In this document: piece after piece, positions 12,878 through 36,134 of the stretch
Layout: every line of letters begins with the position of its first letter
Numbering within the stretch: position 1 is the first letter of the stretch
Virus record (IMG/VR): IMGVR_UViG_3300025162_000016
Location: 124,001 to 188,000 of that record
DNA: 64,000 bases
Strand: one strand, 5' to 3'
Translations under genes and position numbers: made by a program
Notes under the pieces: model-generated
Databases searched by the model: none
What the model was told of the DNA's origin: nothing
The model's input: only the letters and a program-made list of their open reading frames with translations

Positions 12878-15800
12878 ATGCCTACAATCAATAATGGAGG
12901 ATATACCCCCTCCCCCATCGTAAGTCCCGGCGTTTTTACAAAAGAAAACGACCTCTCAGGATTAGCCCAAGGTGTTGCGGAAATCGGCGCAGTAATCGTT
13001 GCCCCATTCCCTAAAGGACCAGGATTTACTCCGGTTATTGTAGAGAGTGTCGCCGACCTAGAAAGTCAATTCGGGGTCGCCGATGGAGTATACTATGGAC
13101 CCTATACCGCCAAAGAATACCTGATAGAAAAAGGATTCGTCACCGTTTGTCGTGTCGGTGCTCTTACTGGATATGAACAGCAATTCCCATTCGTCATTTA
13201 TGCTATCAAAGGCGAATGGACCCGAGCCATAGATGCCGGTTATACTAATTTCGACAAAACATGGCTCTTAAATCCCGTCTTTGTTTTAAATTCATGGAAT
13301 ACCGACAACACGGCGGCTCAACTTATAACTAATGGAACTTTTACTACCGATACCTCCGGATGGGATCATTCTGGAAATGGTGGCTTTAATGTCGTTGATT
13401 CATATTTAGTAATAACCGGAAGTGGTCTCGTAACGCAATCATTTGCAACTGCTTTAGATAAATCATATGATTTATATTATTCATTCATGTCAGGATCCGA
13501 TACACATGGCGGAAATATTAAAATCGGAACTACTGCGGGCGCAAGTGATATTGACGATATTCGTGAATCCGGAGTTGGTCCTAATATTTGGGCTAACCGA
13601 ACCGCTTCATTCGTTGCTCAAGGATCAACTACTTATATAGCTCTTACTAATGCCATTGTCGGAACTACATTATCTGCTAGTTTCGATAATATTTCAGTAC
13701 AAGAAAAAAATCTTACTAATACATATGTCACCGGCGCTGTAGTATTTTCTTCCTCGTTTACCGTACAATTCGCAGATGTTGCCGGGTCAGCAAGTGCGCA
13801 AGCAGCAGGACATGGAACGGGAAGTTCAATGTATTATGGACAAAATGTTTATATTGGAAATGTTGCGGTAAAACTTCCAATATCTCAAGCATTAGCATGG
13901 AGAGATATTAGCGTCAATGTAGCGTCTTCTTCTATCTTAAACGAACTATTACAATCTGGATCGATAGTAGGTAATTTAGTCACAACTAACAATAGTATTA
14001 CGGGCATCGGTGAACCGTGGAATAATCCTTTCGACCCCAACACCACTGGACCGGGAACTCAATTTGCATCATCTTCATACATCAGTCAGTCGTTTGGCGA
14101 ATGTGAAGGCGCAGTATATAAATTGGATGCCTTAATTAAAGGTAGATTCGGAAAATATACCGGAGAATTCCAATCGAATGGTACTCCAACCTATAATCCG
14201 TGCGACGGAACTTGGAAGACAAATAATGCAGATTATAAAGTTTTAGCAGTTCTGGCAGATACTCAAAACTCTCCAGTAAATAGTAACTTGATAGCGGCTG
14301 GTTTTAATGGATCTACAATGGTAACTGCAAGTAATATTGCGGGTGCTACTGAAATTCCAATCGATTATAATTTAACCTTGAAATCTACGGATAGTACCGC
14401 TCCATACGGAACTTATGCTTTCTCATTCGATGCCGGTTCTACAAAATATATTACTACGGTGTTTGGAGATGATCCTACCGCCGGAAATATTGCAACTTAT
14501 GCGGCAGGAACAAAACGAGAAGCGGCTTATACCTATAAAATATTCGAAAATACTATCCGAACCGTAACTGCCGATCCATTGCGATGGTATATTTCAGGAA
14601 GTGTATTGCCCGATGATACCTTCAAAGGTCAACCAATGAACTTCACCGATGAATTTTCATTGAAATTAAATGAAGGCGATTGTCAGTTCGGATTAACTAA
14701 TGCAGCAACTCCTTGGGTTATTTCACAAGAAATTTCTCCTTGGAATGGCGGCACTCCAACTCGGTTCGTTCTTTTCCGAGTGCTCACAATGAGCGATGGA
14801 ACGGATACTAATAGATCCTATAAGATTGAAATAAGTAATATCAAATTAGCCGGAACAGTCTCCGGAACGGATTGGGGTACTTTCACTCTTTCGGTTCGTG
14901 ATTATAGTGATACCGATAAAAAACCACAAATCCTCCAGCAGTTTAATAATTTGACTCTTGATCCAGATTCTTCAAACTTTGTTGCTCGTAGAATCGGCGA
15001 TAGATTCAATTTCATTGACTTCAATGGAAAAATTCTGGAATACGGCACCTATACTAATAACAGTAAATATATCCGTATTGAAATGAATGATATTCCGTGG
15101 CCTATTACAGCAGTCCCTTATGGGTTCGAAGCATACGCACTGCCAGTTGATAGTTCAGCGGGATATTGGTGCCCTCCAATGCGATATACTAAAGCATCAG
15201 TATATTCAGTTAGTCCCGGTAAATACCCATCTGGTATAAACTTCGACGGTGCTCCAACCGGTGCCGAAAATTCACTGGCAGCATTATATCCTACTTCATC
15301 TACTGGCGTAGGAACCGCTGAAGATAATAAACAGTATTTCGCACCACTTCCCCAATTCGATGGTAAAGGCGGAACCTATAGCAGCGTTGGACAGAATTCT
15401 AACTTTGCTCTGGATATGGATATTACTAATGGCGGAGTAATCGAAGCCCCTATTAATTCCGGAAGTCTGCTGGATGGAACAAATATCATTCCCGCAATAT
15501 TAGACAGAGCCGTGGAATCAACTTACGTTAAAATGCGTAAATTCATATTCGGATTTCAGGGTGGATTTGATGGTCAATCTCCTGCAATTCCTATTAATGT
15601 TGGCGGAAATATTATCCCAGGTAATACCCAAGGACTTGATTGCACAAATATCAATTCAGCCGGATCAATTGCTTATAAACAATGTATCGCCGCTCTCGGA
15701 AATGCCGATGAATTCGATATTAACATGATCGTAACTCCCGGTGTTCTCTATGATAGTCATCCATATGTTACTACTCTAGTAGTTGATATGTGTGAAGCTC

Positions 15801-16534
15801 GTGGTGATTGTTTTTATATCTTGGATCTCTATGCCGATGATGGCAATCCCAGCGGTGGACAAATCGAATCAGTCATTAACTTAGCCGCAGAATTCGATAC
15901 CAATTACGCCGGTGCTTATTATCCTTGGGTGAAAATCAAAGATACCAATACTAACAAAATCATCACCGTTCCACCCTCGGTTCTTCTTCCCGGTGTCTAT
16001 GCTGCTAATGATAAAGTAGCGGGCGAATGGTGGGCAGTTGCCGGTCTAAACCGTGGCGGAATTCCTAAAGCAATCCAAGTAACTGATCGCACAACTCATG
16101 CAGAACGGGACGATCTCTACGAAGGAAAAGTTAATCCTATCGCCGCATTCCCCGGTCAAGGTATTGTAGTGTGGGGTCAGAAAACTCTCCAAGTTAAAGC
16201 CTCCGCTCTCGATAGAATCAATGTCCGCCGATTACTCATCGAAATCAAAAAATTCTTCGCCTCATCCGCAAGATACTTGGTCTTTGAACAAAATACCGCC
16301 GCAACAAGAAATAGATTCTTGTCAATCGTTAATCCTTACCTCCAAAGCATCCAACAAAGATCCGGTTTGTACGCTTTCCAAGTGGTAATGGATGATACCA
16401 ATAACACCCCAGATTTAATCGATCAGAACGTATTGTATGGACAGATTTATCTGAAACCTGTGAAATCAGCCGAATTTATCATCTTCGATTTTAATATTTT
16501 AAGCACAGGTGCCAGTTTTGGTGCAAGCGCATAA
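12878..16534 (+). CDS. Contractile tail sheath protein (T4 gp18-like) with large insertions
   Basis: N-terminal SPGVFTKEND; C-terminal YYPWVKI, WWAVAGLNRG, RDDLYEGKVNPIA, WGQKTLQ, SALDRINVRRLL, IYLKPVKSAEFI are sheath hallmarks. Confidence 0.93.
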   Translation: MPTINNGGYTPSPIVSPGVFTKENDLSGLAQGVAEIGAVIVAPFPKGPGFTPVIVESVADLESQFGVADGVYYGPYTAKEYLIEKGFVTVCRVGALTGYEQQFPFVIYAIKGEWTRAIDAGYTNFDKTWLLNPVFVLNSWNTDNTAAQLITNGTFTTDTSGWDHSGNGGFNVVDSYLVITGSGLVTQSFATALDKSYDLYYSFMSGSDTHGGNIKIGTTAGASDIDDIRESGVGPNIWANRTASFVAQGSTTYIALTNAIVGTTLSASFDNISVQEKNLTNTYVTGAVVFSSSFTVQFADVAGSASAQAAGHGTGSSMYYGQNVYIGNVAVKLPISQALAWRDISVNVASSSILNELLQSGSIVGNLVTTNNSITGIGEPWNNPFDPNTTGPGTQFASSSYISQSFGECEGAVYKLDALIKGRFGKYTGEFQSNGTPTYNPCDGTWKTNNADYKVLAVLADTQNSPVNSNLIAAGFNGSTMVTASNIAGATEIPIDYNLTLKSTDSTAPYGTYAFSFDAGSTKYITTVFGDDPTAGNIATYAAGTKREAAYTYKIFENTIRTVTADPLRWYISGSVLPDDTFKGQPMNFTDEFSLKLNEGDCQFGLTNAATPWVISQEISPWNGGTPTRFVLFRVLTMSDGTDTNRSYKIEISNIKLAGTVSGTDWGTFTLSVRDYSDTDKKPQILQQFNNLTLDPDSSNFVARRIGDRFNFIDFNGKILEYGTYTNNSKYIRIEMNDIPWPITAVPYGFEAYALPVDSSAGYWCPPMRYTKASVYSVSPGKYPSGINFDGAPTGAENSLAALYPTSSTGVGTAEDNKQYFAPLPQFDGKGGTYSSVGQNSNFALDMDITNGGVIEAPINSGSLLDGTNIIPAILDRAVESTYVKMRKFIFGFQGGFDGQSPAIPINVGGNIIPGNTQGLDCTNINSAGSIAYKQCIAALGNADEFDINMIVTPGVLYDSHPYVTTLVVDMCEARGDCFYILDLYADDGNPSGGQIESVINLAAEFDTNYAGAYYPWVKIKDTNTNKIITVPPSVLLPGVYAANDKVAGEWWAVAGLNRGGIPKAIQVTDRTTHAERDDLYEGKVNPIAAFPGQGIVVWGQKTLQVKASALDRINVRRLLIEIKKFFASSARYLVFEQNTAATRNRFLSIVNPYLQSIQQRSGLYAFQVVMDDTNNTPDLIDQNVLYGQIYLKPVKSAEFIIFDFNILSTGASFGASA

Positions 16535-27095: not shown

Positions 27096-27587
27096 ATGGC
27101 AGATTTATTAACTAATAATGAAATATTCTTTACAATGTATGAACCAAAAACACAGAACAGGTTCATCATGTATATTGACGGTATTCCGGCATTTCTTATC
27201 CGAAAAACAGATCGCCCAAAATGGTCTTCTGAAAAAATGACGTTAGATCATATTAACGTTCAACGTTATTACAAAGGAAAGACGAAATGGGAAGAAATTA
27301 CTATTGAAATGTATGATGCTATCGTTCCATCTGCCGCACAATCGGTTTTTGAATGGTTCCGTCTATCGCACGAGTCTGTTACCGGGAGGGACGGATACAT
27401 GGACTTTTATAAAAAAGATGTAATTATTAATGTGGTTGGTCCTGTTGGTGATAAAGTAGAGGAATGGAAACTTGTAGGAGCATTCCCTATTTCATTTGAC
27501 GGCGGTACCCTCGATTGGACCAATGGTGGTGATGCTCTGCTTGCAACCTGCACTTTATCGGTGGATTACGCAATTTTACAATATTGA
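27096..27587 (+). CDS. Tail tube protein (T4 gp19-like)
   Basis: EPKTQNRFIMYI, KTKWEEITIEMYD, FEWFRL, YKKDVII, EEWKLVGAFPISFDGGTLDW, TLSVDYA. Confidence 0.92.
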   Translation: MADLLTNNEIFFTMYEPKTQNRFIMYIDGIPAFLIRKTDRPKWSSEKMTLDHINVQRYYKGKTKWEEITIEMYDAIVPSAAQSVFEWFRLSHESVTGRDGYMDFYKKDVIINVVGPVGDKVEEWKLVGAFPISFDGGTLDWTNGGDALLATCTLSVDYAILQY

Positions 27588-27632
27588 TATATCTATCGTA
27601 TTTTCAGATACTTATAACATCCCTACATCAGC

Positions 27633-27667
27633 AAAAAGATCGGCAAATTTCGCCGGTCTTTTTTTTT
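27633..27667 (+). terminator. Rho-independent terminator after tail tube
   Basis: AAAAAGATCGGC-loop-GCCGGTCTTTTT plus long T run. Confidence 0.8.
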
Positions 27668-27677
27668 CTGAAAATTC

Positions 27678-27706
27678 TTGATACTTTCACGTCAATGGTA
27701 TATAGT
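27678..27706 (+). promoter_or_regulatory. Sigma70-type promoter TTGATA-N17-TATAGT for the endonuclease pair
   Basis: Near-consensus boxes at exact 17-bp spacing upstream of ORF 27712. Confidence 0.65.
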
Positions 27707-27711
27707 TATGT

Positions 27712-28839
27712 TTGAAACCAGAATGTGATATGTTAATTGATTTGGATAAAATAATAAAAGAGAATAAAAGTTGTTATTCTTTTTTCATAAAAAGATATCA
27801 CAGAGAATTATATGATGAAATTTTTAAGTTAGATGGAAGCACTTTTTCGGAGAAGTTGTATTTTTACAAGCATGGAATTAGAGGAGTTTGCAAGGAATGT
27901 AGGAATCAGACACCGTTTATTGGAATAAATGATGGGTATCGAGAATATTGCTCGAATAGATGTGTAAATAAGAATTTAGAAATTAGAGAGCGTATAAAAA
28001 GTGGTTTTATAAAAAAGTATGGAGTTGACAATGTTTCTAAAGATATTTCTATAAAAGAAAAAAAGAAGCAGACGTTTTTTAATAGATATGGAGTTAGCAG
28101 TCCATTTGGGATTAAAGCGGTAAAAGAAAAGCGTATAAGAAATGCAAAAAAATATATTGATTGTCACCGAAGTTCCATTCTGTATCGTTTAAAAGAAGAT
28201 CGGAGAAAAGCATTTATTGATCAGTGTGAGAATGGGGAGCGACTTGGATCTGAAATAGAGGCATTATTTGATATAGATAGTTTTACCAATATAAAAGACA
28301 GAATGTTGAAATTTAGGTGTAAAATATGTAAAAATATTTTCCATCATCATTTACAATGGGGAGTAATACCGATTTGTTGGCGATGTCATCCTAATTCCGG
28401 CTTTCAGGATGAAGTCACGGATTTTTTTCAAAATACGAAATTGATTGTGTTTCCAAATGTTAGAAATGTGATTCGAGGGGAATTAGACGTATACATTCCT
28501 TCGATAAAGTTGGCGGTAGAATGTAATGGTGTATATTGGCATTCGTGTAAAAGAAAGAATCAATATTATCATTTGAATAAAACTATACAATGTGAAGATA
28601 AAAATATAAAATTGATTCATTTGTTTGAAAATGAATGGAATGATGCTACAAAGAATCTATTATCATCGATTTTATCGGATAAATTTAATTTCGATGGAAG
28701 TTTTGAGGTGGATAGAAGGATTTTTAATAAAGTATTTTTTCAGAATAAAAAATATCAATTAGTAGGAGAAAGTATGCCGGAAAAGAAACTATTTGGTGGG
28801 TATGAATGTTGGGATTGTGGAACATTAAGTTTTAAATAA
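27712..28839 (+). CDS. Hef-like endonuclease paralog lacking most of the GNAT-like domain
   Basis: CKEC..YCSNRC, KYGVDNV, ELDVYIPSIKLAVECNGVYWH; C-terminus reduced to GYECWDCG. Confidence 0.65.
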   Translation: MKPECDMLIDLDKIIKENKSCYSFFIKRYHRELYDEIFKLDGSTFSEKLYFYKHGIRGVCKECRNQTPFIGINDGYREYCSNRCVNKNLEIRERIKSGFIKKYGVDNVSKDISIKEKKKQTFFNRYGVSSPFGIKAVKEKRIRNAKKYIDCHRSSILYRLKEDRRKAFIDQCENGERLGSEIEALFDIDSFTNIKDRMLKFRCKICKNIFHHHLQWGVIPICWRCHPNSGFQDEVTDFFQNTKLIVFPNVRNVIRGELDVYIPSIKLAVECNGVYWHSCKRKNQYYHLNKTIQCEDKNIKLIHLFENEWNDATKNLLSSILSDKFNFDGSFEVDRRIFNKVFFQNKKYQLVGESMPEKKLFGGYECWDCGTLSFK

Positions 28840-28841
28840 AT

Positions 28842-30842
28842 ATGAAGACCATTATATTGAATCTTATAAAAAGTAATAAAGATTCATTTGTTCAAATAAT
28901 AAAAGCAAAACATTCGTTATTTTATAATGAAATAAATGAAAAGTTTTCTGGGGGTTCATTTTCAGAAAAAATTTATCAGTGGTTAAATTATGAATCAGGA
29001 GTTAACTGTGGAATTTGTGTGGAATGTAAGTCTTCCACCAAATTCCTTAATATAAAGGATGGGTATAGAAAATATTGTTCTTCTAAATGTGCGAATGTAA
29101 GTACTGCCAGTGTTCGATCTATAAAGATGACTCATGTTGAAAAGGATATTAATATATGGGAACAAAAAAAATGTGAACTATGTAATGAGGATTTTTGGGC
29201 ATATAAAAAGAGGAATGGAAGGTTTTGTTCTAATAAATGTAGTGCTTTGTTTACTGCCAACAATAAAGAACGGCTGGAAAAAATTAAATGTACTAAATTA
29301 AAAGTGTACGGAAATGAGACATATGTTAATCCGGAAAAGGCAAAGCAGACTTGTTTAGAAAAATATGGGGTAGATAATGCTAGTAAGGCTAAAGAAGTAA
29401 TTGTTAAAATTCAACAAGTTAATTTGGAGCGATATGGAAAGAAATGGTCATGGCAATCGGAGTCGGTTAAGGAAAAGATAAAGCAAACAAATCTACTTCG
29501 TTATGGAGTAGAAAATCCTTCTCAATCTTCTCATATTAAAGAGAATAAGATACAATCATATTTAAAACAATATGGAGTTAAAAATCCATTTCAGAATCTG
29601 ACAATTAAAGAAGATATAAAGGCACACTATAAGGAGAAATTTGGAGTTGAATATCCTACTCAGATTGAAGAGGTTCGAAATAAAATAGCAGAAATTGTAA
29701 GAAAAAACAATTATAAATTGCTATGTTCTTCAAAGCGGGTATTAGATAATATAGAAGTATTATTTACGGTTGATGAATATAAAGGATCCTCGTCTGAGTT
29801 TTTATATTCAGTTAAATGTAAAAAATGTGGCAATGTTTTTCAAGATCATTTCGATGGAAATGGACATCCGAGATGTTTAATATGCTATCCTAATATCGCC
29901 GGTTTTTCATATGCCGAAAAAGAAATAGTTTCATATATTCATTCTATTGTTTTGAGAGAAGAGATTATAGAAAAGGATAGAAGTGTTCTTGGTAATAGAG
30001 AATTGGATATTTATATTCCTTCAAAGGCATTGGCTATAGAATATAATGGATTATTCTGGCATTCTGAATCTAATGGTAAAAAATCTAAATTATATCATTT
30101 GGATAAGTTAGAACGATGTCAATCTAAGGGAATTAGATTAATTACAATATTTGAGGATGAATGGGAAAATAACCGGGATATTGTTCAAGTTCGGTTACAA
30201 CATATTCTAAACCTATCCACAAATAAAATATATGCGAGACAGTGTTCGATACAAGTTGTTACATCTAAACTTGCGAATGCTTTTTTAAATAAAAATCATA
30301 TTCAGGGAGGATGCTCTTCATTAGTTAATTTGGGATTGTTTGATGAAAATAGTATATTGGTGGCAATTATGACTTTTGGGAAGCCACGACTTAGTTTGGG
30401 AAGATCGGTGTCTATGCCAGGAGAATATGAATTATTAAGATATGCTACATCAAAAGTGGTTGTTGGAGGAGCATCTAAATTGTTTACACATTTTATTAGA
30501 ATCCACTCCCCTGTAAAAATATTTTCATATTCCGATAAACGTTGGAGCACCGGAAAAATGTATGAAAAACTCGGATTTTTGTTTAAAAAAGAAACTAAAC
30601 CAAATTATTGGTATTTTAAGCCGGGTTATGCTATCCGATATCATCGTTTCGGATTTAGAAAGAATATATTAAATGAAAAATTAGATATATTTGATCCAGA
30701 ATTAACCGAGTGGGAGAATATGCAGTTAAATGGATATGATCGAATCTGGGATTGTGGGAATTCTAAATACGAATGGAATAGTCAACCTTTTTGTGGCAAG
30801 GAATCCCTTCCTTTAGGTAAGGGAGGAATTGCCACGATATAA
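28842..30842 (+). CDS. Hef-like endonuclease paralog (full length, 666 aa)
   Basis: Two Zn-finger blocks, several KYGV(D/E)N repeats, ELDIYIPSKALAIEYNGLFWH, VVGGASKLF..SYSDKRWSTG..EWENMQLNGYDRIWDCG; last ~15 codons overlap an IS-like hairpin. Confidence 0.7.
   Translation: MKTIILNLIKSNKDSFVQIIKAKHSLFYNEINEKFSGGSFSEKIYQWLNYESGVNCGICVECKSSTKFLNIKDGYRKYCSSKCANVSTASVRSIKMTHVEKDINIWEQKKCELCNEDFWAYKKRNGRFCSNKCSALFTANNKERLEKIKCTKLKVYGNETYVNPEKAKQTCLEKYGVDNASKAKEVIVKIQQVNLERYGKKWSWQSESVKEKIKQTNLLRYGVENPSQSSHIKENKIQSYLKQYGVKNPFQNLTIKEDIKAHYKEKFGVEYPTQIEEVRNKIAEIVRKNNYKLLCSSKRVLDNIEVLFTVDEYKGSSSEFLYSVKCKKCGNVFQDHFDGNGHPRCLICYPNIAGFSYAEKEIVSYIHSIVLREEIIEKDRSVLGNRELDIYIPSKALAIEYNGLFWHSESNGKKSKLYHLDKLERCQSKGIRLITIFEDEWENNRDIVQVRLQHILNLSTNKIYARQCSIQVVTSKLANAFLNKNHIQGGCSSLVNLGLFDENSILVAIMTFGKPRLSLGRSVSMPGEYELLRYATSKVVVGGASKLFTHFIRIHSPVKIFSYSDKRWSTGKMYEKLGFLFKKETKPNYWYFKPGYAIRYHRFGFRKNILNEKLDIFDPELTEWENMQLNGYDRIWDCGNSKYEWNSQPFCGKESLPLGKGGIATI
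30801..30833 (+). mobile_element. Orphan IS200/IS605-type right-end-like hairpin overlapping the 3' end of ORF 28842
   Basis: GAATCCCTTCCTTTAGGTAAGGGAGGAATTGCC with CTTTAG core; reverse complement resembles the copy at 31188. Confidence 0.5.
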
Positions 30843-30846
30843 TAAA

Positions 30847-30875
30847 TTGACTTTTTTTGTTTTATACTATATATT
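30847..30875 (+). promoter_or_regulatory. Sigma70-type promoter TTGACT-N17-TATATT with no downstream ORF
   Basis: Exact spacing; the next terminator is ~200 nt downstream and the interval holds only very short reading frames. Confidence 0.6.
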
Positions 30876-30881
30876 TGATAC

Positions 30882-31065
30882 AGTCATAAAAGGCACTCCG
30901 TTTACGGAGACACAGTTATGATGACATTGATTTTTTGTTAGTTTATATAAATTAACGGGGCTGCAATCAATCAGCCTATTGTATGTAAATCTTCTAAGAG
31001 TTTAGAAGTATTATAAACTCCCACCTTCAGGTGGGGTAGTTGATATATAGTTATTATCAGCGGAG
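30882..31065 (+). ncRNA. Candidate orphan TnpB-type omega/reRNA scaffold plus guide
   Basis: Several stems (TCATAA/TTATGA, CTCCG/CGGAG, ATTGATT/AATCAAT, GTTAGTTT/AAATTAAC, CTTCTA/TAGAAG); relic frame NGAAINQPIV resembling TnpB C-terminal tails; IS605-like right end AAACTCCCACCTTCAGGTGGGGTAGTTGAT (31015-31044). Confidence 0.45.
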
Positions 31066-31076
31066 TCTATATACAG

Positions 31077-31110
31077 AGCCCTCGAAAGCGATACTTTCGG
31101 GGGTTTTCTT
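31077..31110 (+). terminator. Rho-independent terminator
   Basis: AGCCCTCGAAAG-loop-CTTTCGGGGGTT followed by TTCTT. Confidence 0.7.
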
Positions 31111-31182
31111 CATATTGGGAGTGCGGTTAAAATATTTTTGTGGTTGACACTTTTTCGGAGATGTTGTTCTATTTATAATAGT

Positions 31183-31227
31183 GGAAGGAATTCCTCCCCG
31201 AGGCTAAAGCCATTGGGATTTCCTTCC
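31183..31227 (+). mobile_element. Orphan IS200/IS605-type hairpin between late promoter and start codon
   Basis: GGAAGGAATTCCTCCCCGAGGCTAAAGCCATTGGGATTTCCTTCC with GCTAAAG core. Confidence 0.5.
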
Positions 31228-31236
31228 TCCAAAATT

Positions 31237-31962
31237 ATGAAAAAAGAATTACTGGAATATATTATTCGGAAGTGTGTAAAAGAAGTATTAGCGAACGTTT
31301 CTGAGGCGGATGATACCGCAGGAGCACCCGCCCCGCCTGCAAGTGGGCAGGGAACCGCAGATACATTAGCAATTCCTCCGGCGTCTCCTCAGGGGGCTCC
31401 GAAACCGGCAAAAGCAATAAAAGGGGTATGGTTTGTTGATCCAAAGAAAGCATTACAGCCTGATTATAAGGGGGTTCCATTGCAAGATCTTAAACCGGGA
31501 GATCAAGGAAACAATGAACGGAGAATTTATAATATTGCAGCTAGAAGTGGTGGTCCCCGAGTTATGCTTACTATTTCTGCTCGTCAAAAGGTTGATGCTG
31601 TTTTAAGTGGAAAAGTGCCATTCGTTTATCTTTATGTAGGAACGAAACCATGGTCACCTTCTCAGCAATCCAGTCCGGAGGCATCTACTGGAACTCCGTC
31701 GGATGATTCTGAAAATGCAACGGTTTCTATACATTGGGCACCCACACTTCAAGCCGCCAAAAGTTTAAGTGTGCCATCTGGAGTATCGGCGGAACATCCT
31801 CAGACGGCGTTCAATGAACCAGAACCAGGGTTAACAACGCCTCAGACTGGTCCTCAGACTGCTTCTAAAACTCAGGCTCCAAGCATCGATGAGAGTAATA
31901 GTTTAAAAAATATGGTTTCATCTATGATTGGGGAAGCTCTTAGAGAAGCCCGAAGAAAATAA
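31237..31962 (+). CDS. Hypothetical putative head/virion protein (start revised to MKKELLEYII)
   Basis: ATG at 31237 follows the TATTTATA box at 31170; N- and C-terminal amphipathic helices (IIRKCVKEVL, MVSSMIGEALRE). Confidence 0.6.
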   Translation: MKKELLEYIIRKCVKEVLANVSEADDTAGAPAPPASGQGTADTLAIPPASPQGAPKPAKAIKGVWFVDPKKALQPDYKGVPLQDLKPGDQGNNERRIYNIAARSGGPRVMLTISARQKVDAVLSGKVPFVYLYVGTKPWSPSQQSSPEASTGTPSDDSENATVSIHWAPTLQAAKSLSVPSGVSAEHPQTAFNEPEPGLTTPQTGPQTASKTQAPSIDESNSLKNMVSSMIGEALREARRK

Positions 31963-32313
31963 ATGATTATTAAAGAATCGCAATTTAAAGAGCTTTTAGG
32001 ACATTTGGTAAAAGAAATTATGACCGAATTAGCTTCTAGCTCGGACCCCGTGGATTCGATGTCTCAATCTTCTCCCGATAACGCTTCTTCCCCTGTTACT
32101 CCTATTGATATTGCAACTCAACGGAAAGTAGCACGGGATAAGAAAGACGCTACTAGGAAGGCTCTTAAATTGTCCAAACAAGAATATGCTCAAGGTATAG
32201 ATCAAGCGAAAGCTGACGAAAAAAGAACTGAACTAAATAAACGGACAAAGCTTCCTAAGTTAAAACAACAAATACAGGCACTACAACGACAACAATCGTT
32301 ACAATCGCCATAA
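31963..32313 (+). CDS. Hypothetical putative virion protein (116 aa)
   Basis: Abuts the previous stop; N-terminal FKELLGHLVKEIMTE helix and basic coiled-coil tail. Confidence 0.6.
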   Translation: MIIKESQFKELLGHLVKEIMTELASSSDPVDSMSQSSPDNASSPVTPIDIATQRKVARDKKDATRKALKLSKQEYAQGIDQAKADEKRTELNKRTKLPKLKQQIQALQRQQSLQSP

Positions 32314-32373
32314 TATTTTTTGTAAAAGTCTAATTGTTGACTATATATTAGCAACAGATAGATAAGTTTTATT

Positions 32374-33195
32374 ATGAATGATCAAATCGTTACCCTTACT
32401 CGACCGGGAGTTCGTCCCGCTGCATCGCAATCGACCAAGCAGGAATCTACATTTCCTACAGAAACAATCAACATCCCATCAAAAGGATGGTTTTATTCTT
32501 CTGACAGTCCTCTTTCGGCGGGTACATTGGAATTAAAGCCAATGACAGCAAGAGAGGAAGATATTCTTACTTCTAAAAATCTTATTCAAAAAGGCATTGT
32601 TCTAGATAAGGTATTGGAGTCGCTTATAGTAGAAAAAGCAATTCATTCTGAAGACATGTTAAATTGTGATAGAAATGCTGCTTTTGTGGCTATTCGTCGT
32701 ATGGCATATGGAGACGAATATAAAGCTAATATCACTTGTCCTAAGTGTGGTGTTGACAATTCTTTAACTATTGATCTCGGAAAAATGGATAACAAGCCAT
32801 TTGATTTTGAAAAATATCCGAAAGGGACAAATGAATTTGAGTTTACGTTGCCGGTATCTAAACGGGTAGTGACGTTTAAATTACTTACCAAAAAAGATGA
32901 AGATGCTATTGATGCTGATTTAAAAGCTCTTACAAAAATCTCTAAAGAAGTTACGAGTGAAATTACTACCCGTCTTAAATCATATATTATTGCATTGGAC
33001 GGGAATGCGGATAAAAGTGCTATTCGGAAGTTTGTGGATGAGATGCGAGCGGGGGATAGTTTAGCATTAAGAAATTATGTTCGCACTATGACACCGGATG
33101 TTGACATGAGTTTTGATTTTGTGTGCAGTTCATGCGGAGTTGAAAGGAGGGAGGACGTTCCATTAAGCGTCTCCTTTTTTTGGCCTAACGGATGA
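32374..33195 (+). CDS. Tail/baseplate assembly chaperone (T4 gp26-like, short product)
   Basis: FPTETINIPSKG, LKPMTAREEDIL, CPKCG, FEFTLPVSKRVVTFKLLT, terminal VSFFWP; directly upstream of the tape measure gene. Confidence 0.8.
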   Translation: MNDQIVTLTRPGVRPAASQSTKQESTFPTETINIPSKGWFYSSDSPLSAGTLELKPMTAREEDILTSKNLIQKGIVLDKVLESLIVEKAIHSEDMLNCDRNAAFVAIRRMAYGDEYKANITCPKCGVDNSLTIDLGKMDNKPFDFEKYPKGTNEFEFTLPVSKRVVTFKLLTKKDEDAIDADLKALTKISKEVTSEITTRLKSYIIALDGNADKSAIRKFVDEMRAGDSLALRNYVRTMTPDVDMSFDFVCSSCGVERREDVPLSVSFFWPNG

Positions 33196-33436
33196 ATATA
33201 GAATATCCGTTTACGAGCAAATAGATGGAATGGTTGAGCGGGGTTATAGCTTCTATGATCTCTATACTATGCCGGTATATCTTCGGGGTCTTTTTATTCG
33301 CATTGCAATAAAGAAACAAGAAAAAGAACGTAAAGATATGGATAAATCTCGGGGAGTTTCTGAAGGGGCATCTACCAGTAAAAAATCACCGGGAACAGTT
33401 CCTGGATTTGTTGCTCGGCAATCTTCTGCTAAATAG
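33182..33436 (+). CDS. Frameshift-accessed C-terminal extension of the chaperone (gp51/GT-like); ORF track starts it at ATG 33230
   Basis: +1 frame opens at 33167 and reads ...FFGLTDEYRISVYEQIDGMVERGYSFYDLYTMPVYLRGLF; T7 run at 33175-33181. Confidence 0.65.
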   Translation, partial: GLTDEYRISVYEQIDGMVERGYSFYDLYTMPVYLRGLFIRIAIKKQEKERKDMDKSRGVSEGASTSKKSPGTVPGFVARQSSAK

Positions 33437-33457
33437 TTATTTTATCATTTCAATCAT

Positions 33458-33486
33458 CTCATCCACTGGAAGCAGATGGGTTTTCT
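33458..33486 (+). mobile_element. Degenerate IS200/IS605-type hairpin
   Basis: CTCATCCACTGGAAGCAGATGGGTTTTCT aligns with CCCACCCGCTAAAGCAGGTGGGTTTC at 16548. Confidence 0.45.
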
Positions 33487-33551
33487 GGCGAGAGTGCGAT
33501 AAAAGAGAAGTGCCGGTATATTTATAACAGTATATCGAATAATATATTAAT

Positions 33552-36134
33552 ATGGCAAAAAAAGGTACAACTCAAGATCGAGATAAAACTGAAAATGAAG
33601 TAACAGAGCAAAAAGTTGCGCTTGAACGAGAGCTTGTAAAGATTCGACAAGAATCCGAATTATTGTCGAAAGAACAAGCGAGTATGGATAAGCAACTTTT
33701 AGCTAATGTTAAAGCGAGGCTTGATTTAATCGGTAATAATTTTAACCTAGAAATAAAACTTAGAGATGAGCTTTTTAAAATGCATGCGGCGGAAAAAGTT
33801 GAAGAAGGAAAGGAAAAAAAGCAATTAACCGCAAAACGGAAAGGGATAGAATCGCACTTACGAGATGTAAAAGCCTTAAATAATATAGAAAAAATACAGC
33901 TTGAGACAGCTAAAGAGTTGCTTGCGTTGGATAAAAAAGGAAAAGATGAAGAGACGGCTAAATTTGAGGGTGCATTGGATTATGTTGGTAAATTGGGAGA
34001 TATATTTAAGCTTCAGGCAAATCACTATAAATGGATTAAAAAAATGGATATAATTCCGAAATCGTGGTTGGTGCGGGCGGCAGGATTTGCGGCAATTATT
34101 GAGTATACTGTAACTAAATTTTTAGAATTTGATAAAGCAATGGCAAAGTTCCGTATTCAAATGGGACTTCTCCGAGAGGATTCAAAGCGAATATCCGATA
34201 ATATTAAAAGTGTTTATGTTAGTTTTGTAGGTATTGGGGTTACTATAGAGGGTGCAGTTGTTGCGGCGGAGGCATTGGCAAATGAATTTGGTGGAACGAT
34301 GAAGATTTCTAAAGATCTGATTGAAACCACCGCAATTTTTAAATCGCAGCTTGGGGTTGCAGAAGATGCTACGGCTGGGTTTCTCAGAAATATTTCTGCT
34401 ATTAGTAAAACCACCGCTCAGTCTAATAAACATATTGCATATTTTGCCAGTAGATTATCCGCAGCAGCGGGGGTTCCGCTTAATATGGTTATGCAGGATG
34501 TATCTAAATTATCTGGGAATGCGTTATCAATGGTTTCTCGAATGCCGGGACAATTAATAAAAGCGGCAGTAGAAGCAAGAGTATTGGGAACGACTCTGAA
34601 TAAAATGGCAGATGCCAGTAGACATCTGCTTAATTTCACGGAGAGTATTCAACAGGAAATGGATGCATCGGTTCTTGTTGGCAGAAACATTAATCTTCAA
34701 AAAGCTCGTGAGTTAGCATATCGAAGGGATCTGGTTGGATCTACAAAAGAAATACTTCGTATTGCTAAAAATATTAATTTTGAAAACTTGGATGTATTTC
34801 AGATGGATGCATTTGCTGCTGCAACGGGTAGGTCTACCGATGAATTATTAAAAATGATACAGGCTCAAAGACAGCTTGAAGAAGCCAGAAATATAGATGG
34901 GTTAAAAGATGAAGTTAGAGAATATGAAAGATTAAAAGGAATACGGGAAGGGGATTTGAAAAACGTTGGACTTCAACGGGAGCTTCAAGTAAAACAAATG
35001 GCAAATCAAGAAAGAATTGCGGCATTACAGCAGCAATGGAATAAACTTTTACTTCAAGCTACGGCTACGTTGTTTCCTATTCTTGATGCCACTATGAAAA
35101 TTGCGGGAGTAATTCTTGCGTTGGGACCAGTCCTGATGCCCGTAATAAAACTCGTTGAAGTATTATCTTCACGGATTGGCCGTATAGCAATTGGTGCTCG
35201 TACACTTAGAGATGAATTCATGGTGGCGTGGGAACTATTTAAAGGTGGAATAGAACTTAGTGCCACGCTCTCTAAATGGATTGCGAAAATAGGAAAAGCA
35301 TTTTCTGTCGTTTTTAAAGTTTTCTCTTTTGCAAAAACTTTTGCTCCATTTTTTGAATTTATTCCAGTAGTAGGATGGATTATTACTGGACTGACTTTAC
35401 TTTGTAATCTTTTTAAACGTATTAGCACGGAAGGGTTTTCGCTTGCGTCTATTGGAAAAGCAATTGTGGATACTTTTTGGCAGCCATTTGTCGATGCATG
35501 GGAATGGATTAAGTCTATTTTCGTTGGAAATTCTCCTTCGGTTATGTCACAAGGAATTGTTGATGGTATAATTGCAGTAAAAGGATTAATTTTGAATCAT
35601 TTACTTTCGCCATTTAAGGATGCTTATACATGGATTATGGATAGGATGGGAGGGCATTCGGCATCGGAGTTAATGTTATCCGTTATTCGTGGAATTATTG
35701 GGGGTGGGGCAAAACTATTGGATGTATTGACCAGTCCATTTCGTCAATTTTTCGCATGGGTATTAGAGAAGATACCATTTGTTGGAAAAAATTTAGCAAA
35801 GGGTATTCGGGGTGGATATACCGGGGCGTTAGAAAATTTGGGTGTATTAGAAAAGAAAATTACTACACCGGAATTAATTCCGACGGCAATTACGACGGAA
35901 GCGGTTACTGCTAAATCCCCCCCTATTACTCCCACGATTCCTCCTACTTTAGAAGAATCAAAACAACAGCAACAAAATTCCACGACTTTGGCGGCGATTT
36001 TAAAAGAGCTTTGTAATTTAAATGCAGATTTAACTGCGGGTAAAATTGCGGTTAATATGGATGGTATGCTTGTAAGTGCTCAGATGGATAGGATGACTAA
36101 GTACAAAAAGGGATATGGTGTAATGACGACATAA
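33552..36134 (+). CDS. Tape measure protein
   Basis: 860-aa helical protein with N-terminal coiled coil, LLNFTESIQQEMDASVLVGRNINLQKARELA segment and hydrophobic W/F-periodic C-terminal repeats; canonical position after tube/chaperone. Confidence 0.85.
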   Translation: MAKKGTTQDRDKTENEVTEQKVALERELVKIRQESELLSKEQASMDKQLLANVKARLDLIGNNFNLEIKLRDELFKMHAAEKVEEGKEKKQLTAKRKGIESHLRDVKALNNIEKIQLETAKELLALDKKGKDEETAKFEGALDYVGKLGDIFKLQANHYKWIKKMDIIPKSWLVRAAGFAAIIEYTVTKFLEFDKAMAKFRIQMGLLREDSKRISDNIKSVYVSFVGIGVTIEGAVVAAEALANEFGGTMKISKDLIETTAIFKSQLGVAEDATAGFLRNISAISKTTAQSNKHIAYFASRLSAAAGVPLNMVMQDVSKLSGNALSMVSRMPGQLIKAAVEARVLGTTLNKMADASRHLLNFTESIQQEMDASVLVGRNINLQKARELAYRRDLVGSTKEILRIAKNINFENLDVFQMDAFAAATGRSTDELLKMIQAQRQLEEARNIDGLKDEVREYERLKGIREGDLKNVGLQRELQVKQMANQERIAALQQQWNKLLLQATATLFPILDATMKIAGVILALGPVLMPVIKLVEVLSSRIGRIAIGARTLRDEFMVAWELFKGGIELSATLSKWIAKIGKAFSVVFKVFSFAKTFAPFFEFIPVVGWIITGLTLLCNLFKRISTEGFSLASIGKAIVDTFWQPFVDAWEWIKSIFVGNSPSVMSQGIVDGIIAVKGLILNHLLSPFKDAYTWIMDRMGGHSASELMLSVIRGIIGGGAKLLDVLTSPFRQFFAWVLEKIPFVGKNLAKGIRGGYTGALENLGVLEKKITTPELIPTAITTEAVTAKSPPITPTIPPTLEESKQQQQNSTTLAAILKELCNLNADLTAGKIAVNMDGMLVSAQMDRMTKYKKGYGVMTT

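What the first reader, a model, noticed from the sequence alone, without database searches (positions are those of the whole stretch)
33161..33436. Probable programmed +1 (or -2) ribosomal frameshift in the tail assembly chaperone
Seen: ORF 32374 ends TCC TTT TTT TGG CCT AAC GGA TGA. The +1 frame opens only at 33167 (TAA at 33164) and reads FFGLTDEYRISVYEQIDG before the first ATG at 33230; a T7 run (33175-81) lets tRNA-Phe re-pair. The +1 product would be ~353 aa. Established: lambda G/GT-type chaperones upstream of tape measure genes use programmed frameshifts, mostly -1. Inference: a less common +1/-2 version in a T4-like gp26/gp51 pair that annotation pipelines would miss.
Basis: partly seen in the sequence, partly recalled or inferred. 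Interest (0 to 1): 0.6.

Follow-up and report, generated by a model that had tools for sequence, protein, structure and literature searches.

The report
Conserved +1 frameshift in phage tail chaperone
A 369-kb freshwater jumbo phage makes the long form of its tail assembly chaperone by slipping one base forward at a run of seven T's; the slip site, the out-of-frame tail and a hairpin just before the site are conserved in about 80 related phages, yet none of the seven annotated GenBank records examined joins the two pieces.

Summary
ORF 32374-33195 (273 aa, T4 gp26-like, PF12322) ends TCC TTT TTT TGG CCT AAC GGA TGA. The +1 frame is open from 33167 to 33436.

The same layout occurs in 75 of 79 complete non-redundant related loci (27-79% identity). 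The other four carry the homologous tail in the -1 frame. No locus is fused in frame.

The +1 peptide is conserved from the shift point onward. In many loci that frame has no start codon for 16-59 codons.

The 353-aa fusion corresponds to T4 gp51, the long chaperone form. The zero-frame product corresponds to T4 gp26, the short form. The genome has only this one gene of the family. Independent metagenome assemblies agree on T7.

New here: a 5-9 bp hairpin lies 0-4 nt before the Phe-Phe codons in 49 of 55 loci, with lineage-specific stems. An SD-like element flanks its 5' side.

Best explanation: a programmed +1 ribosomal frameshift at UUU_Y, stimulated by the upstream hairpin. The main rival is hairpin-driven RNA polymerase slippage that drops one U. 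No RNA data were available to decide between them.

This is a new variant of the known lambda G/GT chaperone frameshift.

The parts
32374..33195 (+). Zero-frame ORF, 273 aa: the short tail assembly chaperone (TAC-N), T4 gp26-like
   Evidence: PF12322 scores 62.3 bits against a cut-off of 24.5. phrog_150 matches profile positions 11-232, as T4 gp26 does at 14-235. The AF2 model has pLDDT 88.5. Its N-terminal part (residues ~19-121) best matches the solved chaperones 3klu/YqbN and 2ob9 (the HK97 TAC) and the uncharacterised protein 3fgx, at Z 5.1-6.2.
33175..33181 (+). Shift site: T7 run, zero frame TTT TTT T(GG). tRNA-Phe can re-pair one base forward, after which GGC is read.
   Evidence: Sequence. 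The context TTT TTT TGG CCT occurs in 52 of 69 +1 loci, and every one has an in-frame TTT followed by T or C. Phe is TTT in 127 of 133 codons at the site against 571 of 741 elsewhere. Pro is CCT in 65 of 67 against 239 of 733.
33182..33436 (+). +1-frame extension (GLTDEYR...SSAK, then the stop): the C-terminal tail of the long chaperone form (TAC-NC). It overlaps the zero-frame end at 33182-33195.
   Evidence: Alignment A2 (56 sequences) has the consensus FFGLxPEYKxxxHExIFxLxYxxxGGFTxxEVYNMPIYLRxFY, with L4, Y30, P33 and R37 invariant. In many loci there is no start codon before codon 16-59, and none at all in L051. The AF2 model has three helices and pLDDT 76. It is collinear with the C-terminal tail of T4 gp51. 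It is the only copy in the genome.
33150..33174 (+). Hairpin immediately 5' of the T-run: 9 bp with one bulge, loop CCATTA, -8.9 kcal/mol. Its 3' arm GTCTCC abuts the first T.
   Evidence: Across 55 loci the 30 nt 5' of the Phe-Phe codons have a mean MFE of -8.0, against about -2 elsewhere. The mean z-score against synonymous randomisation is -2.0. This window is in the top 5% of its own gene's windows in 43 of 55 loci. The 3' edge lies 0-4 nt from the first Phe codon in 49 of 55 loci.
33144..33155 (+). SD-like purine tract AAGGAGGGAGGA, flanking and overlapping the 5' arm of the hairpin
   Evidence: SD-like 5-mers occur at 62 per kb in the region -40 to -8, against 4 per kb in the rest of the gene. 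I counted 131, against 34 +/- 6 under synonymous randomisation. The element is adjacent to the hairpin's 5' base in 47 of 55 loci. Its function is unexplained.
33552..36134 (+). Tape measure protein gene (860 aa), the expected client of the chaperone
   Evidence: tblastn similarity to the tape measure proteins of Mel-JY01 and Flavobacterium phage immuto, E 1e-16 and 3e-13. It holds the same position in all annotated relatives.
27096..27587 (+). Tail tube protein gene (T4 gp19-like). In relatives it lies directly upstream of the chaperone gene.
   Evidence: PF06841. It is 57% identical to the Mel-JY01 tube protein.

Best explanation
The gp26-like gene 32374-33195 encodes the short tail assembly chaperone. 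A fraction of ribosomes shifts +1 while decoding TTT TTT T at 33175-33181. Peptidyl-tRNA-Phe re-pairs from UUU to the overlapping UUU, skipping one U, while the zero-frame UGG waits in the A site.

Decoding then continues with GGC CUA ACG... to the stop at 33434-33436. The result is a 353-aa long form, equivalent to join(32374..33180,33182..33436), with the junction ...VSFFGLTDEYR....

The long form is the counterpart of T4 gp51, and the short form is the counterpart of T4 gp26. Together they play the role of lambda gpG and gpGT in building the tail tube around the tape measure protein.

A hairpin that refolds immediately 5' of the E-site codon is proposed to favour the forward slip. It is flanked by an SD-like tract.

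Shown here: the site, its conservation, the homology of both parts, the single gene copy, the hairpin and the SD-like enrichment. Inferred: that the event happens on the ribosome, that the hairpin stimulates it, the ratio of the two products, and which partners each part binds.
For: 1. An out-of-frame homologous extension is present in all 79 complete non-redundant loci: 75 in +1 and 4 in -1. This includes cultured phages at 27-43% identity: Mel-JY01, Flavobacterium immuto, SP-15, HSE3, LIS04, GXN1 and Xoo-sp13.
2. The extension is conserved as protein from the shift point. In many loci there is no start codon for 16-59 codons, and in one locus none at all.
3. Codon choice is constrained at the site.
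4. One rule fits all 69 analysed +1 sites: an in-frame UUU followed by U or C. This includes broken runs such as TTT-C-TTT-GG, TTT-C-TA-TGG and TTC-TTT-CGT, where skipping the base after UUU restores the consensus F(F/Y)GL.
5. On phrog_150 the fusion extends the match from profile position 232 to 271, as gp51 does to 280. hhalign of the fused family against a gp51 alignment is collinear to the end of gp51, E 2.8e-4. T4 gp26 ends at ..EFFELL*, exactly at the homologous point.
6. [quoted passage not shown]
7. The upstream hairpin is conserved, with lineage-specific stems. An upstream hairpin next to the E site stimulates +1 frameshifting on E. coli 70S ribosomes in vitro (PMC6321510).
8. The SD-like enrichment points to a signal read by the ribosome.
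9. T7 is identical in independent assemblies.
Against: There is no direct evidence for either product: no RNA runs hold this sequence, and there is no proteomics.

A hairpin followed by a U-run is equally the architecture of an intrinsic terminator and of hairpin-driven transcriptional slippage.

The A-site codon UGG is a sense codon, not a stop, and its decoding speed in the unknown host is unknown.

The hairpin register differs between lineages, so RNAalifold finds no single consensus. A hairpin is also present in one -1 locus (L063) and is absent from two distant loci.

The loci are related, so the statistics overstate independence.

The SD-like tract is 20-27 nt from the P-site codon along the chain, which is outside the spacing known to act on frameshifting.
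Confidence: 0.6

Rival explanations
1. Hairpin-stimulated transcriptional slippage. As RNA polymerase transcribes the T7 run, the nascent hairpin 33150-33174 forms and shears the weak rU:dA hybrid. The transcript realigns one base forward, giving a subpopulation of mRNAs with U6. Standard translation of those mRNAs yields the same 353-aa fusion.
For: The stem-loop is 0-4 nt 5' of a U-run in 49 of 55 loci, and the window's site is flagged as terminator-like. This is the architecture described for Roseiflexus IS630, where a stem-loop 5'-adjacent to T5C5 gives transcripts lacking one nucleotide (Penno et al. 2015, as summarised in PMC5009743). Losing one nucleotide gives the +1 frame, which matches the dominant direction. 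No downstream structure is conserved.
Against: Loci with no usable run (TTT CTA TGG, TTT CTA TTC, TTC TTT CGT) keep both the hairpin and the +1 extension but cannot realign. The SD-like enrichment has no role for a polymerase. Seven U's is short for unaided slippage (9 are cited in PMC5009743). No RNA data were available.
Confidence: 0.27
2. A -2 ribosomal frameshift on the T7 run, giving ...SFFFGLTDEYR... with one extra Phe.
For: T7 allows full re-pairing after a -2 slip, and the -2 frame is the same as the +1 frame.
Against: Variants such as TTC TTT TGG, TTT CTT TGG, TTT CTA TGG and TTC TTT CGT do not allow -2 re-pairing but do allow +1. An upstream hairpin opposes backward movement (PMC6321510).
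Confidence: 0.04
3. Two separate genes. The small ORF is translated on its own from ATG 33230 or a non-canonical start, and the overlap is incidental. Or the hairpin plus T-run is only a transcription terminator or attenuator that lowers tape measure expression.
For: GenBank records annotate small separate ORFs here. The site is terminator-like.
Against: The most conserved part of the extension (FFGLxPEYKxxxHExIF) lies upstream of ATG 33230. In many loci it lies upstream of every ATG, GTG or TTG, and in L051 there is no start at all. The frequent 'first ATG' is the conserved Met of the NMP motif. The extension is collinear with the tail of gp51, which is fused in T4. A terminator 15 nt before a stop codon would produce non-stop mRNAs.
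Confidence: 0.04
4. Sequencing or assembly error in a homopolymer, or a decaying pseudogene.
For: Homopolymers are error-prone.
Against: Four runs in two studies give identical contigs. The same frame relation holds in about 80 independent assemblies and in cultured phage genomes. Both parts are under protein-level conservation.
Confidence: 0.01

Closest known systems
Lambda gpG/gpGT and the conserved tail assembly chaperone frameshift of long-tailed phages (Levin 1993; Xu, Hendrix & Duda 2004, as cited in PMC2147016 and PMC5009743)
   Same: [quoted passage not shown] The second has no start of its own. There is a slippery homopolymer in the overlap. The short and long forms share their N-terminal part. 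The N-terminal subdomain gives its best structural matches to two solved chaperones (2ob9, 3klu) and to the uncharacterised 3fgx.
   Different: The direction is +1, not -1. The chaperone is much larger (273 against about 140 aa), has a zinc-ribbon and helical domain, and belongs to PF12322. The conserved RNA element is upstream of the site, not downstream.
T4 gp26 and gp51, identified as the T4 chaperone pair by Vladimirov, Gautam & Davidson 2022 (Virology 566:9). That paper is not held in the library and is known here only through citing papers (PMC10274946, PMC12846349).
   Same: Same protein family: PF12322 covers gp26 residues 1-206, gp51 residues 1-201 and the window protein residues 48-259. 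The short form ends at the FF motif, and the long form carries a helical tail of about 50 aa with the M-P..R motif.
   Different: T4 encodes the two forms as two separate, divergently transcribed genes. This phage has one gene and must recode it. Atkins et al. 2016 list T4 as the exception to G-T frameshifting.
E. coli prfB (RF2) +1 frameshift, CUU UGA C
   Same: P-site tRNA re-pairs one base forward onto UUU. A duplex lies just 5' of the E site. The variant TTT CTT TGG C in Flavobacterium phage immuto resembles CUU UGA C.
   Different: The A-site codon is a sense codon (UGG), not a stop. The 5' duplex is an intramolecular hairpin, not an SD:anti-SD helix 3 nt upstream. The SD-like tract lies on the far side of the hairpin.
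Engineered upstream refolding hairpins that stimulate +1 and attenuate -1 frameshifting (Huang, Cho & Chang 2018, PMC6321510)
   Same: A stable hairpin juxtaposed to the E site of a +1-prone site, shown to act on 70S ribosomes.
   Different: Those were designed constructs with 12-bp GC-rich stems, tested on CUUUGA without RF2. Here the hairpins are natural, 5-9 bp, and untested.
Roseiflexus IS630 stem-loop-mediated transcriptional slippage (Penno et al. 2015, via PMC5009743)
   Same: A stem-loop 5'-adjacent to a slippery run, with loss of one nucleotide giving the +1 frame, and terminator-like architecture.
   Different: That is a transposase gene and a heteropolymeric T5C5 motif. Several loci here lack any run that could realign.
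Haloarchaeal myovirus HSTV-2, whose tail chaperone frameshift is 'very likely +1' (PMC5009743)
   Same: A +1 chaperone frameshift in a myovirus.
   Different: It is an unrelated protein family and host domain. I did not examine its site.

Membership tests
Frameshifted tail assembly chaperone (lambda G/GT type) | The gene pair lies between the tail tube (major tail) gene and the tape measure gene, immediately upstream of the latter | tested here: met
   The tape measure gene starts at 33552, 116 nt after the extension's stop. The order sheath, tube, chaperone, tape measure holds in Mel-JY01, immuto, SP-15, HSE3 and LIS04. In the window a 4.8-kb insert separates the tube gene from the chaperone gene.
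Frameshifted tail assembly chaperone (lambda G/GT type) | The second ORF overlaps the end of the first in another frame, has no conserved start of its own, and this arrangement is conserved among diverged relatives | tested here: met
   75 loci in +1 and 4 in -1 of 79 complete loci, with conservation upstream of any start codon.
Frameshifted tail assembly chaperone (lambda G/GT type) | A -1 slippery heptamer (X XXY YYZ) in the overlap | tested here: not met
   In the window the needed shift is +1 (or -2) and the -1 frame closes after 9 codons. A -1 heptamer with a -1 extension is found only in L004, L089 and L061/L063.
Frameshifted tail assembly chaperone (lambda G/GT type) | Chaperone fold of the shared N-terminal part | tested here: inconclusive
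   The three best of 48,161 chains are 3fgx (Z 6.2), 3klu/YqbN (Z 5.5) and 2ob9, the HK97 TAC (Z 5.1), each with 83-88 residues aligned. These Z values are below the tool's own caution line of 8, and Foldseek gave E above 0.6.
Frameshifted tail assembly chaperone (lambda G/GT type) | Both products are made in a fixed ratio, are required for tail assembly and are absent from virions. The short part binds the tape measure protein and the extension binds the tube protein. | not testable with these tools
   This needs infection proteomics, genetics and binding assays.
T4 gp26/gp51 family (Pfam PF12322 T4_baseplate; phrog_150) | Match to the family profile above the curated cut-off | tested here: met
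   62.3 bits against 24.5. phrog_150 E 2e-17, and 2.6e-18 for the fusion.
T4 gp26/gp51 family (Pfam PF12322 T4_baseplate; phrog_150) | The long form carries the gp51-type C-terminal tail | tested here: met
   On phrog_150 the match reaches position 271 of 282 for the fusion, against 232 for the zero frame and 280 for gp51. hhalign gives E 2.8e-4 for the fused profile and 0.024 for the extension alone. This is weak but collinear.
T4 gp26/gp51 family (Pfam PF12322 T4_baseplate; phrog_150) | The short and long forms are encoded by two separate genes (the T4 arrangement) | tested here: not met
   There is a single PF12322 locus and a single extension locus in the complete 368,758-bp genome.
prfB-type +1 programmed frameshift | The P-site codon allows +1 re-pairing of its tRNA | tested here: met
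   UUU followed by U or C in all 69 analysed +1 loci.
prfB-type +1 programmed frameshift | A stop codon in the A site and an SD sequence 3 nt 5' of the shift codon | tested here: not met
   The A-site codon is UGG. The SD-like tract is 20-27 nt upstream along the chain, and the hairpin occupies the proximal position.
Stem-loop-mediated transcriptional slippage (Roseiflexus IS630 type) | A stem-loop immediately 5' of a run that can realign by one base | tested here: met
   In the window the hairpin 33150-33174 abuts T7. This is not met in loci with TTT CTA TGG, TTT CTA TTC or TTC TTT CGT.
Stem-loop-mediated transcriptional slippage (Roseiflexus IS630 type) | A subpopulation of transcripts lacks one nucleotide | not testable with these tools
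   No RNA run holds the sequence, and only contigs could be laid.

The most novel reading that the evidence does not exclude
This would be a natural, deeply conserved +1 ribosomal frameshift signal of a new composition: an SD-like tract, then a hairpin refolding next to the E site, then UUU_UGG. It would be used by a large clade of mostly uncultivated T4-related and jumbo myoviruses to make the gp51-like long chaperone from a gp26-like gene. It would be the first natural counterpart of the engineered upstream-hairpin +1 stimulators. It would also represent the undivided arrangement, with T4's separate genes 26 and 51 as the split version.
Probability: 0.4. Interest if true: 0.7.

Novelty: new variant of a known kind. 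Interest (0 to 1): 0.58.

Why it matters
Three reasons.

1. Annotation. None of the seven annotated GenBank relatives examined joins the two ORFs. They list a 'baseplate hub subunit' plus a short hypothetical protein, or nothing. More than 590 IMG/VR stretches encode relatives of the upstream protein. One rule would correct them: PF12322 gene, FF motif, +1 join.

2. Phage biology. T4 has been cited as the exception to the otherwise near-universal G-T chaperone frameshift. This family shows the same protein in the frameshifted state, so T4's two genes can be read as the same two products encoded separately.

3. Recoding mechanism. A covarying hairpin placed just before a +1 site, with an adjacent SD-like tract, is a testable natural signal. 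It bears on how structures at the mRNA exit side of the ribosome, or in the RNA exit channel of RNA polymerase, bias the direction of slippage. The cultured relatives Mel-JY01, Flavobacterium phage immuto and Bacillus phage SP-15 make this testable at the bench.

Tried and rejected
- Complex prediction of the tail tube protein (A3) with extension residues 1-60 (A2) returned no verdict, score 0.00.
- Alignment A1 (the fusion plus separate N-terminal and extension fragments) was unusable, because MAFFT placed the short extension fragments inside the N-domain. The fused protein was therefore not folded as one chain. The two parts were folded separately.
- Downstream stimulator: no conserved structure in the 70-75 nt after the site. 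The mean z-score was -0.6 and alifold found nothing. The window's own hairpin AACGGAT..ATCCGTT (33187-33211) is not conserved.
- RNAalifold on the 45-nt upstream alignment found no consensus, because the hairpin register differs among lineages. A single register pairs 61% of cells against 52% in shuffles. Register-free tests were used instead.
- BLASTP of the fusion against T4 gp51 was not significant, E 0.29-0.57. The extension profile against the single gp51 sequence gave E 0.27. The link rests on profile comparisons.
- Pfam and PHROGs gave no match for the extension alone.
- Megablast of the locus against GenBank phages found nothing.
- Foldseek against the PDB gave nothing at E <= 0.001, and a sequence profile against the PDB gave nothing relevant.
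- The key paper, Vladimirov et al. 2022, is not held. What it says about frameshift sites in gp26-like genes is known only second-hand.
- The family scans and locus search left nothing open.
Full report
**1. The observation**

ORF 32374-33195 (273 aa, P0001) ends GTC TCC TTT TTT TGG CCT AAC GGA TGA. T7 occupies 33175-33181. In the +1 frame a TAA lies at 33164-33166. The frame is then open from 33167 to 33436 (P0002) and reads ASPFFGLTDEYRISVYEQIDG before the first ATG at 33230.

Reading one four-base step at TCCT (33172-33175) gives the same product as a slip in the run. That product is a 353-aa protein, P0004, with the junction ...PLSVSFFGLTDEYR....

Contigs from four lake or freshwater metagenome runs in two studies cover 32300-33700 without any difference or gap, at depths of 11-48x. 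The T7 run is therefore not a homopolymer error, although some of these runs may be the source of the assembly. In the same runs, diverged relatives match the window only over the 18-31 nt around the run (records 3 and 8). This already hints at nucleotide-level conservation.

**2. The genes**

The upstream protein belongs to Pfam PF12322 (T4_baseplate, 62.3 bits against a cut-off of 24.5) and to phrog_150, 'baseplate hub'. ORF 33552-36134 is the tape measure protein, by similarity to the annotated tape measure proteins of Microcystis phage Mel-JY01 and Flavobacterium phage immuto. The tail tube gene is 27096-27587 (PF06841).

The window lies in a complete 368,758-bp virus record with direct terminal repeats, so this is a jumbo phage.

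**3. Conservation of the recoding arrangement**

tblastn and a scan of IMG/VR gave 80 loci at 44-100% identity (more than 590 stretches matched). Annotated phages at 23-43% identity were added.

After removing duplicates, 82 loci remain, of which 79 are complete.

- In 75, the homologous extension (57-97 aa beyond the stop) is in the +1 frame. In six of these both alternative frames are open, and a profile of the extension picks +1 with E of 1e-26 to 1e-35, against 0.2-5 for the other frame.
- In four, the extension is in the -1 frame, each with a usable -1 heptamer: L061 and L063 (A AAT TTC), L004 (T TTT TTC) and Xanthomonas phage Xoo-sp13 (T TTT TTT).
- No locus has the two parts in one frame.

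None of the seven annotated GenBank records examined joins the ORFs.

**4. The site**

Among the 69 simple +1 loci the context is TTT TTT TGG CCT in 52. The variants are TTT TTT TAC CCT, TTC TTT TGG, TTT CTT TGG, TTT CTA TGG, TTT CTA TTC, TTC TTT CGT, TTT TTT CAC and TTT TTT AGT. The feature common to all is an in-frame TTT followed by T or C.

Codon choice is constrained at the site. Phe is TTT in 127 of 133 codons there, against 571 of 741 elsewhere in the genes. The following Pro is CCT in 65 of 67, against 239 of 733.

In the broken-run variants, skipping the base after the first TTT restores the consensus product F(F/Y)GL.

**5. The extension is translated from the shift point**

Alignment A2 (56 sequences) has the consensus FFGLxPEYKxxxHExIFxLxYxxxGGFTxxEVYNMPIYLRxFYxKxL, with L4, Y30, P33 and R37 invariant.

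The first ATG, GTG or TTG in that frame often lies 16, 32 or even 59 codons after the shift point, and L051 has none. The frequent ATG at codon 32 is the conserved Met of the NMP motif. Independent initiation cannot produce the conserved part.

AF2 predicts three helices for the extension (residues 6-22, 26-31 and 34-64; pLDDT about 90 over residues 10-50) followed by a disordered basic tail.

**6. Relation to T4**

PF12322 covers T4 gp26 (residues 1-206 of 208) and also T4 gp51 (residues 1-201 of 249). gp51 is therefore a gp26-like domain plus a tail of about 48 aa.

On phrog_150 (282 positions):

- gp26 matches positions 14-235;
- gp51 matches 13-280;
- the window's zero-frame product matches 11-232;
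- the +1 fusion matches 11-271, and the score rises from 64.4 to 67.4 bits.

hhalign of the fused family profile against an alignment of nine gp51 proteins is collinear from gp51 residue 9 to its end (E 2.8e-4). The extension profile alone aligns to gp51 positions 220-253 (E 0.024). These values are weak, but the alignments are positionally exact. The FF|GL junction aligns with gp51 ..VFKLL.., and T4 gp26 stops right there (..EFFELL*).

According to citing papers, Vladimirov, Gautam & Davidson (2022) identified gp26 and gp51 as the short and long chaperone forms of T4-like phages, encoded by separate genes (PMC10274946; PMC12846349). I could not read that paper. Atkins et al. 2016 list T4 as the exception to the conserved G-T frameshift (PMC5009743).

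The AF2 model of the zero-frame protein (pLDDT 88.5) has no significant Foldseek match. In an exhaustive alignment against 48,161 chains, its three best matches all lie on residues ~19-121. They are 3fgx (an uncharacterised Bacillus stearothermophilus protein, Z 6.2), 3klu/YqbN (Z 5.5) and 2ob9, the HK97 tail assembly chaperone (Z 5.1). This is suggestive, but below the tool's caution line.

**7. Signals around the site**

There is no conserved structure downstream.

Upstream, almost every locus has a hairpin whose 3' arm ends just before the Phe-Phe codons. The stems differ between lineages. Examples are GTTGCGGTC/GACCGCAAC, AGTGGTC/GACCACT, GTCGAT/ATCGAC and TGTACC/GGTACA, and in the window GGAG-GACGTT/AGCGTCTCC at 33150-33174, -8.9 kcal/mol.

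Register-free tests give the following.

- The 30 nt 5' of the Phe-Phe codons have a mean MFE of -8.0 kcal/mol. Other positions in the genes give about -1.3 to -3, and the profile has a sharp peak at the site.
- The mean z-score against synonymous-codon randomisation is -2.0 (t = -12 over 55 loci, which are not phylogenetically independent).
- This window is among the most stable 5% of windows in its own gene in 43 of 55 loci.
- The 3' edge lies 0-4 nt from the first Phe codon in 49 of 55 loci. The median stem is 8 bp and the median loop is 5 nt.

Because the register shifts between lineages, RNAalifold gives no consensus. A single register pairs 61% of cells against 52% in shuffles, with 0 of 500 shuffles reaching the observed value.

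The hairpin also occurs in the distant +1 loci SP-15, HSE3 and LR756508, and in one -1 locus (L063). It is absent from GXN1 and Xoo-sp13.

Just 5' of the hairpin there is an SD-like tract. The density is 62 SD-like 5-mers per kb against 4 per kb in the rest of the genes. I counted 131, against 34 +/- 6 expected from the encoded amino acids. The tract is adjacent to the hairpin's 5' base in 47 of 55 loci. In the window it is AAGGAGGGAGGA at 33144-33155.

**8. Mechanism**

That a long form is made by recoding is, in my judgement, about 93% likely. How it happens is less certain.

(a) +1 ribosomal frameshifting, about 0.6.

- One rule (UUU followed by U or C) fits every analysed +1 locus, including those without a homopolymer.
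- tRNA-Phe reads UUU and UUC equally. This is my own knowledge and was not tested here.
- With the second Phe codon in the P site, the hairpin abuts the E-site codon. That is the position at which an engineered refolding hairpin stimulates +1 and attenuates -1 frameshifting on E. coli 70S ribosomes, as a 'functional mimicry of an internal SD-mediated duplex' (PMC6321510).
- The SD-like tract suggests that the ribosome reads the signal. If the hairpin is extruded, the tract lies only 0-9 nt from the first Phe codon in 42 of 47 loci. Whether that matters is speculation.

(b) Hairpin-driven transcriptional slippage, about 0.27.

- A hairpin followed directly by a U-run is terminator-like.
- In Roseiflexus IS630 such a stem-loop makes RNA polymerase produce transcripts lacking one base (PMC5009743). 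That would give the +1 frame.
- It cannot work at TTT CTA TGG or TTC TTT CGT, and it gives no role to the SD-like tract.
- For the window's own T7 it cannot be excluded, and both processes could contribute.

(c) A -2 shift, independent initiation and sequencing error are each unlikely, for the reasons given under the rivals.

By analogy with lambda gpG and gpGT (PMC5009743), the shared part should coat the tape measure protein and the extension should recruit the tube protein. This is inference only. A complex prediction gave no verdict (see Tried and rejected).

**9. Novelty**

Three things are known:

- chaperone frameshifts, mostly -1, with some +1 cases;
- gp26/gp51 as the chaperone family of T4-like phages, from the 2022 paper I could not read;
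- upstream hairpins as +1 stimulators in engineered constructs.

Four things appear new, as far as the open literature searched here shows:

- the near-universal +1 recoding of gp26-like genes outside the T4 group;
- its T7-GG site;
- the covarying hairpin 5' of the site;
- the flanking SD-like tract.

I rate it a new variant of a known kind, of moderate to good interest.

Noticed in passing
window 12878-16534: The tail sheath ORF is 1218 aa, against 709-812 aa in Mel-JY01 and immuto. Homology is interrupted between about 13363 and 14414, so there is an in-frame insertion of about 350 aa. It has no Pfam match. It could be an extra decoration domain or an intein-like insert.
   Followed up: partly
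window 27588-32373: About 4.8 kb lies between the tube gene and the chaperone gene. These two genes are adjacent in relatives. The insert holds two DUF7487 ORFs (27712-28839 and 28842-30842); the second, 666 aa, also matches HNH/homing-endonuclease PHROGs (phrog_3339). It also holds two ORFs without matches (31138-31962 and 31963-32313). It looks like a mobile-element insertion into the tail module.
   Followed up: partly
window 33454-33487: A 34-nt stretch between the extension's stop and the tape measure start (CATCTCATCCACTGGAAGCAGATGGGTTTTCTGG at 33455-33488) also occurs, with 2 mismatches, on another contig of the same depth in all four metagenome runs. It does not occur elsewhere in the 64-kb window. 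It is probably a repeated intergenic regulatory element of this 369-kb genome. It contains a small hairpin followed by T's.
   Followed up: partly
window 33144-33155, and the same position in 47 of 55 related loci: The SD-like purine tract adjacent to the 5' base of the pre-site hairpin is enriched about 15-fold, beyond what the encoded amino acids require. Along the chain it is too far (20-27 nt) from the shift codon for the known SD effects on frameshifting. Its role is unexplained.
   Followed up: partly
L061:3717-3944, L063:2240-2470, L004:4681-4953, L089:4283-4555: Four loci carry the homologous extension in the -1 frame, with -1 heptamers (A AAT TTC, T TTT TTC, T TTT TTT). In L061 and L063 the old T-run has decayed to TTC TTC. 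The direction of recoding has therefore switched several times within one protein family.
   Followed up: partly
L001:5998-6234, L002:4851-4961, L085:4309-4428, L086:4246-4416: GenBank annotates the extension as a separate 'hypothetical protein' of 36-78 aa starting at an arbitrary internal ATG or TTG. In LIS04 and GXN1 it is not annotated at all. The upstream gene is called 'baseplate hub subunit'. These look like systematic annotation errors.
   Followed up: yes
window 33389-33405: A second terminator-like hairpin (CCGGGAACAGTTCCTGG followed by ATTTGTTGCT) lies inside the poorly conserved 3' end of the extension, about 30 nt before its stop.
   Followed up: no
window 33187-33211: The inverted repeat AACGGAT-N11-ATCCGTT starts 5 nt after the T-run in the window only. 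It is not kept in the closest relatives L006 and L008, so it is probably incidental.
   Followed up: yes
whole genome (G000:C1, window = 124001-188000): The source is a complete 368,758-bp jumbo phage with direct terminal repeats. It is found at near identity in lake and freshwater metagenomes from two studies. Its closest cultured relatives by this locus are a Microcystis phage and Flavobacterium phages. The host is unknown.
   Followed up: partly
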